A DNA stretch of 63,310 nt, filler included, from Octopus bimaculoides (Eukaryota): the NCBI RefSeq assembly GCF_001194135.2. It is 8 parts of 7 records of this genome, joined end to end, with 100 filler letters (N's around TTAATTAATTAA, not from the genome) between each part and the next. Parts side by side here need not be neighbours in the genome. Positions count along the whole stretch, not along the records: positions 33,024 to 34,669 come from NC_068994.1; 7 more parts are not named here. The stretch is one strand, 5' to 3'. The notes beneath the pieces were generated by a model. It saw nothing but the letters and a program-made list of their open reading frames with translations, was not told where the DNA came from and ran no database searches. This document shows, in pieces, positions 17,690 to 34,789 of the stretch. Numbering within the stretch: position 1 is the stretch's first letter; every line of letters starts with the position of its first letter. The position numbers were made by a program, and so were the translations under genes.

Positions 17690-18771
17690 AATAGAAAAAG
17701 TGATGTCATCCACTGTCAACGAGAATCTGCAGTGTCGCAAGTTTTCCACAACTATGAATTCGACATCTTCGGCCATTTCACAAATGCGGCAAGATACAGT
17801 GTTGTTTGAAAGTGGAATGCGTGCTAAAACTGAGGCAGCGTTTGGCATATTAGCAACTTTATATGCTTCAAGAATGGAGGGCCTAATCAGATCTTCGCCA
17901 ATGGTATGTGGGCGACCCTGTTTTGCTATCATGAGCGAAATGTTATAGGACGCCTGCAGACCAGGACGGTTGTTAGTATGGACGAGGAAATTTTTGAGCG
18001 ATGAAGATGGGACATTTTTTTTTTTTGCGATGGTATTCTTCGAAGTACTCCTTTGGCTTGCGAAATAAACCAGGATGGATTTTTTGTAGATGATACAACA
18101 ATTTCGAGAGGGTTCCATTGAGTCGTTAGTTAATACTTTTGAGATAATACACTGTGGTAAAAAAGGATCTTCTACACTGGATACAAAACCATATTTGATA
18201 TAATCTTCGTGATATTGTCTACAGAATCTTTTTTCCGAGTCGGTGGACGGAGAATTAAGGGAACGTTTTTCCATATCACTGACAGCAAAATTTCTACAGA
18301 TTACAATTAGACTAACACTTGCGTAAAAATGTACGTACCTGGAAAGCTAACACGATATGTTGAGTAAGCTGTAAGAACTGCGGTTTCGTTAGTAATCCTG
18401 AATTCAAAAGTCAGGTAGAAAACACGATTGCGTTGACCGGCCGAGAACACAAATTTTGTTTTAATGCGCGCAAACGTGGACCCGATTGTACGCGTCTGTA
18501 GCTGTCTGGCACGCGTCCGTGTATGATTGGATAGCTAATCGTCCAATAGGCAATGAGTGCACTCGTATGTGCTCACGCATTTGCGATGAGGCATATTTCG
18601 TTTGCGCGACATGTGCGTGTACGGAAAAATGTTAATTCTTCAGGTGAACCACAGAAAATTTTCCACGGACCATCTGAATTTTCCTGTGGATCACCTGGAT
18701 TTTCCTGTGGACCACCTGGATTTTCCTGTGGACCACCTAGTGGTGCACATGGACCAGGTTGGGAACCCCTG
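17690..18771 (-). mobile_element. hAT transposon, Buster/Charlie (ZBED5-like) group, 5' half with TIR
   Basis: RQYHEDYIKYGF, LPQC, SYNISLMIAKQGRPHTIGEDLI, IPLSNNTV..RICEMAEDVE motifs; TIR CAGGGGTTCCCAACC starts at 18771; adjacent 8-mer ACATAGAC is TA-centred; no 3' TIR seen. Confidence 0.92.
18675..18740. repeat. Three 21-bp subterminal tandem repeats of the hAT element
   Basis: ATTTTCCTGTGGACCACCTGG unit repeated three times without spacers. Confidence 0.9.
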
Positions 18772-19732
18772 ACATAGACCCACATTGCTGCCGATTCTAC
18801 AACCACAACAACAACAACGGCGGCATCGGAAACAACAGGAGTAATAGCTGAAGGCGCTTACATAAATGACGAGATATCGGAGAGGAGTAGCGACGAGTAG
18901 AGCAGCTGAATGAGTCCCTCTCTAAAAGGAAAAGCAAAAAACAGCCTTACAAGTATATATTTGCATACATGCATCAACCAGCCTTTCCCAATTTCCTCTG
19001 AATTCTCGTTAAGTAAGAGAGGGAGACCATATGATTGTAAATCGTGATCGTGACCGTCGTCCTAGAAAAATAGTAAAGCCGATTGGACTCCAAAAGGTAT
19101 GCAAACCAGCCCTCTCACAGCAACACCAACATAAAACAACAACCTAACCCATAACTATCATAACAAAAACACTTACCAGAGCATAAAGAATACAAGAATA
19201 AGCTCTGACACAACAACAGCCACAGCAAGAAAAACAACAACGCCCATAAATACTTGTCAAATTCACCGGTGGCTTGTGAAATAGTATACTACAAAGAAAT
19301 AGAAATAAGAGGAAGACCAACGACCAATAGCTCTCAAAGGCGACAGCCGACAGACGTCTGGTGAAGACCACAGCAGAAGTCTTCAAACCTCCGAGTCTGC
19401 TCAGACAGTTTCAACTGTCTAACTGGTACCGATTGCGTCTCTCGAAAGAGCCAATATGGAATTAGAAAATTACATCACGCCTTCAAGATCATATCTAGTT
19501 TTGTTGTGTTTTGTTGTTTACTTTATTTTGGGTGTGTTGCATTTATCTTCGTAGTTTACGTTCTAAGTCTTTTTTTAATATTAATGGTACTTTATTGTCA
19601 ATTTTTTTTTTTGCTTTCTGCATGAATTCCTTTCCTTTATGTGTTCTGTTTCGATTTTTGATATTTTGAGGGGCTTTAGTATATATATNNNNNNNNNNNN
19701 NNNNNNNNNNNNNNNNNNNNNNNNNNNNNNNN

Positions 19733-32900: not shown

Positions 32901-33024
32901 TGTATATATGCATATGTATATATNNNNNNNNNNNNNNNNNNNNNNNNNNNNNNNNNNNNNNNNNNNNTTAATTAATTAANNNNNNNNNNNNNNNNNNNNN
33001 NNNNNNNNNNNNNNNNNNNNNNNC

Positions 33025-33360
33025 CTACCAAGTGATAACACAATAGATGCCACATTGTTGATTATCATTGTAGTAGCAGCTGTGATAGTATCTATAGCTA
33101 TTGTGGTTTCTATAACACTGTGTATTGTGAGATGTAACAATGTGAGAAATAGCTCATCTGAAAGAACAGCAGAAGAGAAACAGGCATACCAATGTCGCAA
33201 TGAGATGAGACAGTTGATCTATCAAGGTAACAACAGTGTACCTGTGATGTCAGGTAATCGAGGAGAGACATCAGACAGATATGGTCATTCGAGGAGCCAT
33301 TACTATCCAGAAGACTGGAAGACATCAACAATGAGCAGAAGTTTACCAAAAAGTATGAAG
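33025..33360 (+). CDS. Single-pass type I membrane protein: exon with TM helix and juxtamembrane tail (5' end lost in gap)
   Basis: 25-residue hydrophobic run LLIIIVVAAVIVSIAIVVSITLCIV followed by RC; open for 112 codons; AAG|GTATGT donor, phase 0. Confidence 0.85.
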
Positions 33361-33600
33361 GTATGTTTTAAGATTCTCTTTTGATAATCTTATAATTATT
33401 TACTGAATAATGATATTAAACGTTATTTTTAAACTTAGTCTGTAACTTGTTAGTTTGTTTCTTTCTTCATATTTATTTCAATTCAGTAACGTGAATAGTG
33501 ATTTTTATTATTGAATGCTTAGATTTTATAAAATCTTTAATGTAATATATTTTGTTAAAATTACAATAATTGATGGAACAATTTTTTTCTGTAACAGCAG

Positions 33601-33751
33601 AAATACAGTCAACCAATAGAGGTGACATCTTATGGAGACAACAGACCATCTTCTAGCTATCCCACTGATACATTGACCAGTCGTAAGAGCAGTGGACAGT
33701 GCTGGAGTGAGCGGTCAAGTAGACAGTATGAAGAAATACCAGCAATATCAG
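33601..33751 (+). CDS. Same membrane protein, cytoplasmic exon (KYSQPIEV...SRQYEEIPAIS)
   Basis: Tandem CAGCAG acceptor, 151 nt open in phase 0, CAG|GTAAAA donor, phase 1. Confidence 0.85.
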
Positions 33752-34046
33752 GTAAAACACTTTGATTTCTCTATCTTAATTGGTATGTTTGTCATTTCCC
33801 CCAATGATATCTTTTGGAGTGAGCTCGAAATGAACACTATGATAATTTTATTTATTAGTTTAATTGTCATTTGATGTACTGAAGATTGTACAGATCTGTT
33901 TGTATAGTGAAGTATTAATTTCTTTATAATAGTTGTTTTCTAGATTATTGCATAGAAGAGAAGAGAATATTGACCAAATTCTGTCAGTAAATACTTATTG
34001 TCTTTGTGTACCATATAAGTTCAGTTGATGTACATATATGTTTCAG

Positions 34047-34165
34047 GAATCTATGGTGCCCCACCTGATGTATCAAGCACCATTGAGAGAGACCATTACC
34101 AAGACAGATATGTGAAACCTCCAGAGAGACAGTTACCTTCAACACCAGATGTTGTTGTCAGTTAA
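34047..34165 (+). CDS. Same membrane protein, terminal exon (GIYGAPP...RQLPSTPDVVVS*)
   Basis: TTTCAG acceptor; phase 1 splice restores the frame; TAA at 34163-65. Confidence 0.85.
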
Positions 34166-34461
34166 GTGAGATTGAGAAGCTAACACAACAGAAATAATAT
34201 CACCTTCAACATTCACACAATATTTAAAACAACAGAAATATATTAGTTAGTTAACAATATTGCCAACATATGACTGAATATCTTTGTATGTGTTTCAGAC
34301 AAAGTATTTGAAAAATGTGTACACCTGGGGTAGGTTTCTGCAGATAAAACTGATATAACATCAATTGTTCTGTTTAATCAATTTACAACACTCTATTGTT
34401 AGGTAAACCAAAGGTAAATGCAATATTGTAAGAAATCATTGATATATATTCCTTGCAGTAA

Positions 34462-34467
34462 AATAAA
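34462..34467 (+). terminator. AATAAA poly(A) signal of the membrane-protein gene (second at 34497-34502)
   Basis: Canonical hexamers about 300 nt after the stop codon. Confidence 0.6.
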
Positions 34468-34789
34468 GTTTGACATTAAAAAAAATTGTATCAAGCAATA
34501 AATATCAACAACTTTAAGATATAAAATGCTTCTATTGTATTTTAAATATATATATAGTTTACATGGCAGCCTTAAATTTGCTAAATAGGAGATTTAGTTT
34601 AGAATTAGGTCAGACACACACTGTTATTGTCAATATTGTATTTACATTTTAAATTACACACACATTAATNNNNNNNNNNNNNNNNNNNNNNNNNNNNNNN
34701 NNNNNNNNNNNNNTTAATTAATTAANNNNNNNNNNNNNNNNNNNNNNNNNNNNNNNNNNNNNNNNNNNNAAATAAAAGAAATTTTATTT

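What the first reader, a model, noticed from the sequence alone, without database searches (positions are those of the whole stretch)
33025..34165. Unidentified receptor-like protein whose tail combines Src SH2, Src SH3 and Abl-type motifs
Three phase-compatible exons give a TM helix plus a cytoplasmic tail of about 165 residues with 12 tyrosines and no catalytic domain. It contains QYEEIP (the canonical pYEEI Src-family SH2 ligand), RQLPSTP (class I RxLPxxP SH3 ligand) and IYGAP, YSQP and YVKP (YxxP, Abl/Crk-type). Juxtamembrane cysteines could be palmitoylated. Having both Src ligands in one tail suggests a Src-activating scaffold receptor, for example immune, phagocytic or adhesion (inference). 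The ectodomain is not visible.
Basis: partly seen in the sequence, partly recalled or inferred. Interest (0 to 1): 0.7.

Follow-up and report, generated by a model that had tools for sequence, protein, structure and literature searches.

The report
Tail end of an octopus protocadherin
The "unidentified receptor" is the membrane-spanning and intracellular end of one gene in the known tandem protocadherin (cell-adhesion) array of Octopus bimaculoides; the ectodomain is hidden by an assembly gap, and the Src-type docking motifs in the tail are real and mostly conserved but have not been tested.

Summary
Three GT/AG-bounded, phase-compatible exons (33025-33360, 33598-33751, 34047-34165) encode a transmembrane helix and a 167-residue tail. 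The tail has 12 tyrosines and contains QYEEIP, RQLPSTP, YSQP, YGAP and YVKP.

The piece is 100% identical to O. bimaculoides CM046614.1 and lies between two assembly gaps. Just upstream of the 5' gap are a signal peptide and cadherin repeats. In Argonauta hians, which has no gaps here, the same TM and tail continue from one ~2.4 kb exon that encodes six cadherin repeats. So this is the 3' part of a clustered-type cephalopod protocadherin. The 209-aa "uncharacterized protein" model of the neighbouring copy is truncated.

Every tandem copy has its own two small tail exons, so there are no shared constant exons. EC4 through the tail is nearly identical between paralogues, including at synonymous sites, while EC1-3 vary.

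YEEIP, KY[SC]QP and RQLPS[TP]P persist in diverged tail relatives. IYGAP does not, and one relative has QCEELP. Three YxxP motifs is no more than chance would give.

Src SH2/SH3 docking is plausible, with a precedent in vertebrate Pcdh-alpha binding Fyn, but it remains an inference. The gene family is well known, so interest is low to moderate.

The parts
33025..33360 (+). The last 336 nt of the large first exon of a protocadherin gene. It encodes 10 extracellular juxtamembrane residues, the TM helix and the first 77 cytoplasmic residues. The reading frame is open to the piece's 5' edge, which is an assembly gap.
   Evidence: Searches give the sequence and frame. One search shows 100% identity to L001:20064-21709. 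Searches show an N run directly upstream. Before that gap lie a signal peptide, a Cadherin_2 domain and a Cadherin domain. In Argonauta the same sequence is the end of a continuous ~800-codon exon.
33055..33129 (+). Transmembrane helix, LLIIIVVAAVIVSIAIVVSITLCIV.
   Evidence: One search gives the translation. AlphaFold2 on the 97%-identical P0001 puts a helix over residues 15-74, with block-mean pLDDT of 96-97 across residues 21-40 in the TM segment. The TM is almost identical in protocadherins whose tails are unrelated (P0012).
33121..33135 (+). Membrane-boundary cysteines, C-I-V-R-C (Cys codons at 33121-33123 and 33133-33135). These are candidate palmitoylation sites. A third Cys codon is at 33193-33195.
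   Evidence: The sequence is. The motif is conserved as LCIVRCN, ICIVRCN or LCIVKCN in diverged octopus protocadherins. Palmitoylation itself is an inference.
33361..33597 (+). Intron 1 (237 nt, GTATGT...AACAG, G+C 0.20).
   Evidence: The intron sits at the same codon position in the O. bimaculoides paralogue and in three Argonauta genes.
33598..33751 (+). Tail exon 2 (51 codons plus 1 nt). It begins with QKYSQP (YSQP at 33604-33615) and ends with QYEEIPAIS (QYEEIP at 33724-33741). A tandem cagCAG acceptor lies at 33595-33600.
   Evidence: Homologous exons are present in L001, L007, L008, L009 and the Logan contigs L002/L003. The +/-Q isoforms are seen in P0001/P0006 and P0010/P0003.
33752..34046 (+). 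Intron 2 (295 nt, GTAAAA...TTTCAG, phase 1).
   Evidence: The phase is the same in Argonauta genes A, B and C.
34047..34165 (+). Tail exon 3, up to the TAA stop. It carries IYGAP (YGAP at 34052-34063), YVKP (34109-34120) and RQLPSTP (34127-34147).
   Evidence: The homologous exon is present in every tandem copy in O. bimaculoides and Argonauta and in Logan contigs L004-L006.
34166..34669 (+). 3' untranslated region (G+C 0.26), cut off by the next assembly gap. AATAAA occurs at 34462-34467 and 34497-34502.
   Evidence: The first ~130 nt and a 75-nt block align with the paralogue's 3' flank. Rfam finds nothing. Use of the poly(A) sites was not tested.

Best explanation
**What it is.** The piece holds the 3' end of exon 1, both small tail exons and part of the 3' UTR of one gene in the tandem protocadherin array of Octopus bimaculoides (record CM046614.1).

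**The full gene.** One ~2.4 kb exon encodes the signal peptide, six extracellular cadherin repeats, the TM helix and ~77 cytoplasmic residues. Two private small exons then complete a ~167-residue, apparently disordered tail. The ectodomain is missing from the piece only because an assembly gap interrupts exon 1.

**How it works, by analogy (inferred).** By analogy with vertebrate clustered protocadherins, the variable EC1-3 would give homophilic recognition specificity. The part from EC4 to the C-terminus is kept almost identical among neighbouring paralogues, also at synonymous sites. That pattern points to gene conversion plus purifying selection. The effect is a 'constant' signalling tail without shared constant exons.

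**How the tail works (inferred, about 0.35).** The tail would be a phosphotyrosine/proline docking platform.
- After phosphorylation, YEEIP would bind a Src-family SH2 domain.
- RQLPSTP, 39 residues downstream, would bind the SH3 domain.
- Together they would recruit and open a Src-family kinase at sites of protocadherin engagement.

**Shown versus inferred.** Gene identity, exon structure, tandem organisation, the mosaic conservation pattern and motif conservation are shown. Adhesion specificity, phosphorylation and kinase binding are inferred.
For: **Identity and location.**
- The piece is 100% identical over all 1646 nt to L001:20064-21709 of GCA_001194135.2 CM046614.1.
- N runs flank it on both sides.
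- Upstream of the gap, L001:18102-18967 encodes a signal peptide, a Cadherin_2 domain and a Cadherin domain.

**Full-length relatives.**
- 90%-identity clusters that contain this tail also contain full-length protocadherins. These are Argonauta GAB1604090.1 (876 aa, Cadherin_2 plus 5 Cadherin domains) and O. bimaculoides XP_052828955.1, named 'protocadherin gamma-C4-like'.
- The gap-free Argonauta locus L007 has three tandem genes. Each has a continuous ~800-codon exon running from the signal peptide through 'MFTAVHLPSDNTIDATLL...' to the same donor site. Each is followed by its own exon 2 and exon 3 in the same phases.
- The best PDB match for the ectodomain is protocadherin gamma-B4 EC1-6, 6e6b, E = 2e-87.

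**Tandem copies and mosaic conservation.**
- At least five copies of the tail lie within 35 kb of O. bimaculoides DNA.
- Argonauta paralogues are 0.38-0.90 identical in EC1-3 (synonymous third positions 0.3-0.9). From EC4 to the stop they are 0.96-1.00 identical (synonymous 0.9-1.0).
- In O. bimaculoides, EC1-3 are 60% identical between neighbours, against 97% for TM plus tail.
- Tail dN/dS between Octopus and Argonauta is 0.20-0.31.

**Motif conservation.**
- QYEEIP, KYSQP, RYVKP and RQLPSTP are unchanged in O. bimaculoides, O. sinensis and Argonauta.
- Tails only 38-55% identical still carry LYEEIP with KYSQP (P0018), HYEEIP with KYCQP (P0031), and RQLPSPP (P0017).
- YEEI and RxLPxxP each occur in about 0.2% of shuffles.

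**Structure.** AlphaFold2 gives a confident TM and juxtamembrane helix. After residue ~78 the pLDDT stays mostly below 50 to about residue 180 and at about 60 beyond, with no secondary structure predicted.

**Literature.**
- Cephalopod PCDH diversity comes from full gene duplication without shared final exons, with homogenisation by gene conversion, and there is a 43 Mb array on O. bimaculoides chromosome 14 (PMC9068888).
- The Src SH2 domain binds pYEEI with high affinity, and the reference probe is EPQpYEEIPIYL (PMC2888578).
- The Pcdh-alpha intracellular domain interacts with Fyn (Kohmura 1998, as cited in PMC6339937).
Against: - The middle of this particular copy (roughly EC3/EC4 to EC6) lies in an assembly gap. 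Its intactness cannot be shown, and the frames on the two sides of the gap cannot be compared.
- No RNA reads were available for this copy. The RefSeq model that starts in its exon 1 (LOC128249405) is a chimera that skips the window's own exons 2 and 3.
- For the Src mechanism, no binding or phosphorylation data exist.
- A related O. vulgaris protocadherin tail (QBA31128.1) has QCEELP and IYSQQ.
- The P0031-type tails have no detectable exon 3, and so no RxLPxxP, within the locus I examined.
- Much of the conservation among close paralogues and species may reflect gene conversion and low divergence (dS about 0.2) rather than motif-specific selection.
- YEEI also fits the YxxPhi sorting signal.
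Confidence: 0.88

Rival explanations
1. The motifs have no SH2/SH3 function. The tail is a disordered, Ser/Tyr/Pro/Arg-rich segment. Its sequence is held constant among paralogues mainly by gene conversion and among octopods by modest divergence, and the match to textbook Src ligands is coincidence.
For: - Synonymous sites are homogenised along with the protein sequence from EC4 to the stop codon.
- dS between Octopus and Argonauta is only about 0.2.
- The motifs were picked after the fact from many possible short linear motifs.
- The YxxP count is at chance level.
- The key tyrosine is Cys in QBA31128.1.
- Exon 3 is undetectable next to the P0031-type tails.
Against: - YEEIP and KY[SC]QP survive in tails that are otherwise only 38-50% identical.
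- RQLPS[TP]P survives in an exon 3 that is 57% identical.
- dN/dS of 0.2-0.3 shows selection on the protein.
- The introns of the O. bimaculoides copies do not align although the exons do.
Confidence: 0.35
2. YEEI works as a tyrosine-based YxxPhi sorting signal that binds an AP-complex mu subunit. On this reading the tail mainly controls endocytosis and intracellular trafficking of the protocadherin, not kinase recruitment.
For: - YEEI is the only YxxPhi match in the tail, against 1.6 expected, so it is not enriched.
- It is the best-conserved tyrosine motif.
- From general knowledge, not tested here: vertebrate clustered protocadherins are trafficked largely through endosomal compartments under the control of their cytoplasmic domains.
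Against: - The conserved block extends to Pro at +4 and to the flanking Gln, as in the Src SH2 reference ligand. YxxPhi does not require either.
- This reading does not explain the conserved RQLPSTP.
- The two roles are not mutually exclusive.
Confidence: 0.2
3. The gene product is a short transmembrane adaptor of LAT/PAG type. That would be about 209 aa, with a ~17-residue ectodomain, membrane-proximal cysteines and a tyrosine-rich tail, as RefSeq models for the neighbouring copy (XP_014783453.1).
For: - The RefSeq model of 209 aa starts at the Met of MFTAVHLPSDN.
- The overall layout resembles transmembrane adaptors.
Against: - In L001 the frame is open upstream of that Met as far as the gap ('TSPMFTAVH').
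- In Argonauta, MFTAVHLPSDN lies inside an uninterrupted ~800-codon cadherin exon in three genes.
- The older O. bimaculoides model (630 aa) and XP_052828955.1 join cadherin repeats to this same tail.
- A minor internal-promoter isoform cannot be excluded.
Confidence: 0.04

Closest known systems
Cephalopod (octopod) tandem-array protocadherins (Albertin et al. 2015 and 2022; Styfhals et al. 2019)
   Same: This is one of them.
- It comes from O. bimaculoides CM046614.1.
- The genes are arranged head to tail.
- The architecture is six EC repeats plus a TM.
- It has the octopus-type TM motif.
- It is multi-exonic, with private 3' exons.
- Paralogues are homogenised.

   Different: Nothing differs in kind.
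- This particular copy is split by assembly gaps and has no correct gene model.
- The YEEIP/RQLPSTP content of this sub-array's tail is not mentioned in the papers I could read. Those papers report only that vertebrate CM1-3 motifs are absent.
Vertebrate clustered protocadherins alpha/gamma (a variable exon plus three shared constant exons)
   Same: - The ectodomain is homologous; the best PDB hit is Pcdh gamma-B4 EC1-6, E = 2e-87.
- One large exon encodes EC1-6, the TM and the proximal tail.
- EC2-3 are diverse while the membrane-proximal ECs are homogenised by gene conversion (PMC4978886, compared).
- All members of a sub-array share a common tail.
- Pcdh-alpha binds the Src-family kinase Fyn (cited in PMC6339937).
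   Different: - There are no shared constant exons. Every copy has its own two tail exons 0.2-1.9 kb downstream. PMC9068888 says the same for cephalopods.
- The tail sequence has no detectable similarity to the vertebrate constant domains or to any Pfam family.
Bipartite Src-binding sites of p130Cas (RPLPSPP plus pYDYV) and FAK (RALPSIP plus pY397AEI). The FAK details are from my own knowledge.
   Same: An RxLPSxP class I SH3 ligand is combined with a nearby acidic Yxx[I/V] SH2 ligand in a disordered region of an adhesion-linked protein. RQLPSTP here, and RQLPSPP in P0017, compare with RPLPSPP in Cas.
   Different: - The order is reversed: the SH2 site comes first and the SH3 site follows 39 residues downstream.
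- The motifs sit on a transmembrane cadherin rather than a cytosolic scaffold or kinase.
- There is no homology, only motif resemblance, and binding is untested.
Hamster polyomavirus middle-T-derived peptide EPQpYEEIPIYL, the reference high-affinity Src/Lck SH2 ligand
   Same: It shares the six consecutive residues QYEEIP.
   Different: This is a six-residue coincidence or convergence with no relationship between the proteins. Phosphorylation of the octopus tyrosine has not been shown.
Transmembrane adaptor proteins (LAT, PAG/Cbp, NTAL)
   Same: A TM helix, membrane-proximal cysteines and a non-catalytic tail with many tyrosines.
   Different: Those adaptors have ectodomains of a few residues. 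This protein has six cadherin repeats. The short 209-aa model is a truncation.

Membership tests
Protocadherin (cadherin superfamily, non-classical) | An ectodomain of six or seven extracellular cadherin repeats behind a signal peptide. | tested here: met
   None of this is inside the window, because the piece starts at an assembly gap. In the same gene upstream of the gap there are a signal peptide, a Cadherin_2 domain (2.4e-8) and a Cadherin domain (7e-20). Argonauta proteins with the same TM and tail have Cadherin_2 plus 5 Cadherin domains (9e-73) in one continuous ORF. The middle of this copy cannot be seen.
Protocadherin (cadherin superfamily, non-classical) | A single transmembrane helix after the last EC repeat. 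| tested here: met
   A 25-residue hydrophobic segment lies at 33055-33129. AlphaFold2 predicts a helix there with block-mean pLDDT of 96-97 over residues 21-40.
Protocadherin (cadherin superfamily, non-classical) | The cytoplasmic domain lacks the classical-cadherin catenin-binding domain. | tested here: met
   Pfam gives no significant hit to the tail. Cadherin_C_2 scores E = 3.8 and only over the TM region. PDB sequence search finds nothing.
Protocadherin (cadherin superfamily, non-classical) | The whole ectodomain plus the TM is encoded by one unusually large exon. | tested here: met
   In Argonauta L007 there are continuous reading frames of 797-832 codons that end at the same GT donor as window 33360/33361. 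In the window the frame is open to the gap.
Cephalopod tandem protocadherin arrays | Head-to-tail tandem full-gene duplicates on the protocadherin chromosome. | tested here: met
   At least five tail copies on one strand lie within 35 kb of CM046614.1. Four tandem genes are present in Argonauta L007. PMC9068888 describes the array. That CM046614 is chromosome 14 is inferred only from the accession order.
Vertebrate-type clustered Pcdh alpha/gamma organisation | Many variable first exons are spliced to one shared set of constant exons. | tested here: not met
   Each copy has its own exon 2 and exon 3 within 0.24-1.9 kb.
Vertebrate-type clustered Pcdh alpha/gamma organisation | The constant cytoplasmic domain is homologous to the alpha or gamma constant region. 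| tested here: not met
   A profile search of 1.84 billion representative proteins found only octopod protocadherins plus two spurious repeat proteins. Pfam gives no match.
Delta-protocadherins | The conserved cytoplasmic motifs: CM3 (the RRVTF / [RK][VI]xF PP1 site of the delta-1 group) or a WIRS motif (Phi-x-[TS]-F); CM1 and CM2 were not scanned for. | tested here: not met
   The tail contains no phenylalanine at all, so [RK][VI]xF and WIRS are both absent. Styfhals et al. likewise found no CM1-3 in octopus PCDHs.
Transmembrane adaptor proteins (LAT/PAG-like) | A very short ectodomain of a few residues, with no extracellular domains. | tested here: not met
   The ORF continues upstream into cadherin repeats.
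Src-family kinase docking scaffolds (a functional class, not a homology family) | A class I SH3 ligand RxLPxxP and an SH2 ligand Y-[DE]-[DE]-[ILV] are present in one disordered region. | tested here: met
   RQLPSTP is at 34127-34147 and YEEI is at 33727-33738. Each appears in about 0.2% of shuffles. Both are conserved in Octopus and Argonauta.
Src-family kinase docking scaffolds (a functional class, not a homology family) | Tyrosine phosphorylation and physical binding or activation of a Src-family kinase. | not testable with these tools
   This needs biochemistry.
ITAM/ITIM immune receptors | Yxx[LI]-x6-9-Yxx[LI] (ITAM) or [SIVL]xYxx[ILV] (ITIM). | tested here: not met
   The tail contains no match to either pattern.

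The most novel reading that the evidence does not exclude
One octopod protocadherin sub-array has evolved its own 'constant' cytoplasmic domain. The domain is kept uniform by gene conversion rather than by shared exons. Its conserved core, YEEIP plus RQLPS[TP]P, would be a bipartite Src-family kinase docking and activation site. If so, cephalopods and vertebrates would have converged in two ways: in expanding protocadherins, and in coupling a variable recognition ectodomain to a common Src/Fyn-linked signalling tail.
Probability: 0.3. Interest if true: 0.5.

Novelty: already known. Interest (0 to 1): 0.22.

Why it matters
As a gene identification this is routine. The piece belongs to the well-described protocadherin expansion of octopus.

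Two things have some value.

**Annotation.** Assembly gaps have split these tandem genes into cadherin fragments with no tail and "uncharacterized" tail-only proteins. At least one RefSeq model is a chimera of several copies. Counts and phylogenies that rely on these models will be distorted.

**Biology.** What cephalopod protocadherins signal through is an open question. The literature I read states only that the vertebrate tail motifs are absent. A conserved YEEIP plus RxLPSxP pair on a tail shared by a whole sub-array gives a concrete and cheap hypothesis to test: docking of a Src-family kinase.

Tried and rejected
- **Pfam on the spliced 202-aa product.** Only weak matches driven by the TM segment.
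- **PDB sequence search with the tail.** Nothing below E = 0.3.
- **Rfam on the whole piece, both strands.** No match at E <= 1.
- **Word-indexed protein searches.** These returned only short tail-only models. They missed long proteins with the same tail (P0013, P0014) that the cluster look-ups and the exhaustive HMMER scan did find. Counts therefore underestimate the family. I left the third search of this kind unused.
- **Two hits of the exhaustive scan (P0015, P0016).** Both are internally repetitive proteins hit in many stretches. I dismissed them as spurious.
- **Origin of the Logan contigs (SRR118693xx).** I could not establish the species. An 88%-identical non-coding block shared with O. 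bimaculoides suggests another octopod.
- **Look-ups that returned nothing.** The exact-product look-ups for O. sinensis P0003 and O. vulgaris P0014 found no record.
- **Papers not held.** Albertin 2015 and Noonan 2004 are not in the library, so statements about them rest on papers that cite them.
- **Readings I considered and rejected.** These were a LAT/PAG-like adaptor (the ORF continues into cadherin repeats), an ITAM/ITIM receptor, a delta-protocadherin with a WIRS or PP1 motif (the tail has no Phe), a MEGF10/Draper-type phagocytic receptor (no NPxY, and the ectodomain is cadherin), and shared constant exons.
Full report
**What is in the sequence**

On the + strand, the piece 33024-34669 carries three coding segments in compatible phases:
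- 33025-33360, with the frame open to the 5' edge
- 33598-33751
- 34047-34165, with the TAA stop at 34163-34165

The two introns are 237 and 295 nt. Each starts with GT and ends with AG after a pyrimidine-rich stretch. G+C is 0.39-0.44 in the exons, 0.20-0.28 in the introns and 0.26 in the 3' flank.

The spliced product is 202 aa:
- 10 extracellular residues
- a 25-residue hydrophobic helix (33055-33129)
- a 167-residue tail

The tail has 12 Tyr, 28 Ser, 16 Arg, 13 Pro and no Phe.

**Are the motifs more than chance?**

I ran 20,000 composition-preserving shuffles of the tail.

| Motif | Result |
|---|---|
| YEEI | in 0.2% of shuffles |
| RxLPxxP | in 0.2% of shuffles |
| generic [RK]xxPxxP | in 12% of shuffles |
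| three or more YxxP | in 5% of shuffles (mean 0.9) |

The two Src-type motifs are individually improbable, although they were selected after the fact. The "Abl/Crk" YxxP count is unremarkable. The tail contains no ITAM, ITIM, NPxY, YxN, [RK][VI]xF or WIRS pattern.

**Where the piece comes from**

The spliced protein is 97% identical to O. bimaculoides XP_014783453.1, an "uncharacterized" protein of 209 aa.

Fetching that locus showed that the piece is 100% identical over all 1646 nt to L001:20064-21709 of GCA_001194135.2 CM046614.1. That position is the next tandem copy downstream of XP_014783453.1. The piece is bounded on both sides by runs of N in the assembly.

Directly upstream of the 5' gap, L001:18102-18967 is an open frame. 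It encodes a signal peptide, a Cadherin_2 domain and a Cadherin domain.

**Identity: a protocadherin**

- The 90%-identity clusters holding this tail also hold full-length proteins. These include Argonauta hians GAB1604090.1 (876 aa, Cadherin_2 plus five Cadherin domains). An older O. bimaculoides model of 630 aa also joins cadherin repeats to this same TM and tail.
- The exhaustive profile scan added O. bimaculoides XP_052828955.1, named "protocadherin gamma-C4-like", which has the same tail.
- The Argonauta locus L007 has no gaps and is decisive. It holds three tandem genes, each with a continuous frame of about 800 codons.
  - That frame runs from the signal peptide through "...SNKTSPMFTAVHLPSDNTIDATLLIII...", the TM and the proximal tail.
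  - It ends at the same GT donor as window 33360/33361.
  - Each gene then has its own exon 2 and exon 3 in the same phases, with introns of 492/882, 492/381 and 520/737 nt.
- The Met that starts the 209-aa RefSeq model is therefore internal, and the model is a truncation caused by the gap.
- The best solved-structure match for the ectodomain is protocadherin gamma-B4 EC1-6 (6e6b, E = 2e-87). It is followed by CELSR1 (a seven-pass cadherin), then Pcdh10, gamma-A9 and alpha-7.

**Organisation and evolution**

At least five copies of the tail lie on one strand within 35 kb of O. bimaculoides DNA, interrupted by many gaps. Each copy has private tail exons. There are no shared constant exons.

This agrees with Albertin et al. 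2022. That paper reports that cephalopods diversify PCDHs by full gene duplication with homogenisation by gene conversion. It places a 43 Mb array on O. bimaculoides chromosome 14 (PMC9068888).

The paralogues are mosaics:

| Comparison | EC1-3 | EC4 to stop codon |
|---|---|---|
| Argonauta, amino-acid identity | 0.38-0.90 | 0.96-1.00 |
| Argonauta, synonymous third positions | 0.3-0.9 | 0.9-1.0 |

In O. bimaculoides the window gene and its neighbour are 60% identical over EC1-3 and 97% identical over TM plus tail. Their introns do not align, although their exons do. Tail dN/dS between Octopus and Argonauta is 0.20-0.31.

Vertebrate clusters show the same polarity: EC2-3 are diverse, and EC4-6 are homogenised by gene conversion (PMC4978886). 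In effect this octopod sub-array has a "constant" tail without constant exons.

**How far the tail reaches, and whether the motifs are conserved**

A profile of the last 128 residues was scored against 1.84 billion representative proteins. Beyond close copies it found only:
- a divergent O. vulgaris protocadherin (QBA31128.1)
- two exon-sized fragments from Logan assemblies
- two spurious repeat proteins

. A second search added an O. vulgaris model, P0031. Within these limits the tail is specific to octopods.

| Motif | O. bimaculoides, O. sinensis, Argonauta | Diverged relatives |
|---|---|---|
| QYEEIP | unchanged | LYEEIP (P0018), HYEEIP (P0031), QCEELP (QBA31128.1) |
| KYSQP | unchanged | KYSQP (P0018), KYCQP (P0031), IYSQQ (QBA31128.1) |
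| RYVKP | unchanged | RYVKN (P0017) |
| RQLPSTP | unchanged | RQLPSPP (P0017) |
| IYGAP | varies: IYGGAP, LYGSP, IYGSQ | HYTIQ (P0017) |

IYGAP is therefore not conserved. No exon 3 homologue was found near the P0031-type tails. The membrane-boundary cysteines (LCIV[RK]CN) and the TM sequence are conserved even in protocadherins whose tails are unrelated (P0012).

**Structure**

AlphaFold2 was run without an alignment on the 97%-identical P0001. It gives a confident helix through the TM and juxtamembrane region (residues 15-74). After residue ~78 the pLDDT stays mostly below 50 to about residue 180 and at about 60 beyond, with no secondary structure. This is consistent with a disordered tail carrying short linear motifs, but it is weak evidence on its own.

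**Most likely function**

*Shown.* It is a protocadherin of the octopus tandem array.

*Inferred from the family.* It gives homophilic cell-cell recognition through the variable EC1-3, probably in neurons. Styfhals et al., summarising Albertin 2015, report that these genes are enriched in nervous tissue.

*Inferred from the motifs, about 0.35.* The shared tail would be a docking platform.
- QYEEIP equals six consecutive residues of the reference Src SH2 ligand EPQpYEEIPIYL (PMC2888578).
- RQLPSTP resembles the SH3-binding RPLPSPP of the p130Cas Src-binding domain (PMC2956669).
- A combined SH2 plus SH3 ligand is the classical way to recruit and open a Src-family kinase.
- There is a precedent in the family: Pcdh-alpha/CNR binds Fyn (Kohmura 1998, cited in PMC6339937).

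*Rivals.*
- The motifs are coincidental passengers of a gene-converted, slowly diverging tail (0.35).
- YEEI is a YxxPhi sorting signal (0.2, and not exclusive of the Src reading).
- The product is a short LAT/PAG-like adaptor (0.04). The continuous cadherin ORFs contradict this.

**Comparison with the known, and verdict**

The gene meets the defining features of a protocadherin and of the cephalopod tandem arrays.

It fails the features of several other groups:
- vertebrate alpha/gamma organisation (no shared constant exons, no homologous constant domain)
- delta-protocadherins (no RRVTF/PP1 or WIRS motif in the tail, and CM1-3 reported absent from octopus PCDHs)
- transmembrane adaptors
- ITAM/ITIM receptors

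The receptor is an adhesion receptor, the organism is a cephalopod, and the Src motifs are real and largely conserved. But the protein is not unidentified, and the Src-activation idea is untested. The kind is already known. Interest is low to moderate and rests on the testable hypothesis about the tail and on the annotation problems in this region.

Noticed in passing
window 33595-33600: The acceptor of tail exon 2 is a tandem cagCAG (NAGNAG). It matches the pairs of RefSeq isoforms that differ by one Gln at this junction in O. bimaculoides (P0001/P0006) and O. sinensis (P0010/P0003).
   Followed up: partly
window 33205 (= L001 20245); L009 10001-25085: RefSeq LOC128249405 (143 aa) starts at the Met inside the window's exon 1. 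It then continues with exon pieces of later tandem copies across assembly gaps (L009 15989-16033, 17700-17852, 24963-25079). The model is a chimera, and the window's own exons 2 and 3 are in no gene model that I saw.
   Followed up: yes
L007 230-17677 (Argonauta hians); L001 7939-9225 compared with 18132-18965: The tandem paralogues are mosaics. EC1-3 have diverged, also at synonymous sites. EC4 through the TM and tail to the stop codon is nearly identical, also at synonymous sites. This indicates gene conversion of the 3' two-thirds, the same polarity as reported for vertebrate clustered protocadherins.
   Followed up: yes
L009 3664-3812, 19015-19167, 25856-25988, 31789-31941; L004 1136-1284: A non-coding block of about 150 nt recurs roughly 700-900 nt downstream of the stop codon of each tail copy. 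It is 88% identical to a Logan contig from another, unidentified, probably octopod sample. In the window's copy it would fall inside the assembly gap. It could be a conserved 3' UTR element or a repeat.
   Followed up: no
L008 16236-16802 and 29395-29874 (O. vulgaris): A diverged tail type (P0031) keeps KYCQP and HYEEIP, but no exon 3 homologue (RxLPxxP) was found in the 37 kb locus. The public models instead end in a 12-residue micro-exon just upstream of the next gene, which looks doubtful.
   Followed up: partly
window 33055-33135; P0012, P0014: The TM helix and the flanking C-I-V-[RK]-C are almost identical in octopus protocadherins whose cytoplasmic tails are otherwise unrelated. The TM and juxtamembrane segment may therefore have a role of its own, for example cis association or palmitoylation.
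   Followed up: no
window 34462-34467 and 34497-34502: Two AATAAA hexamers lie about 300-335 nt after the stop codon and are possible poly(A) signals. The public gene range nevertheless extends much further.
   Followed up: no
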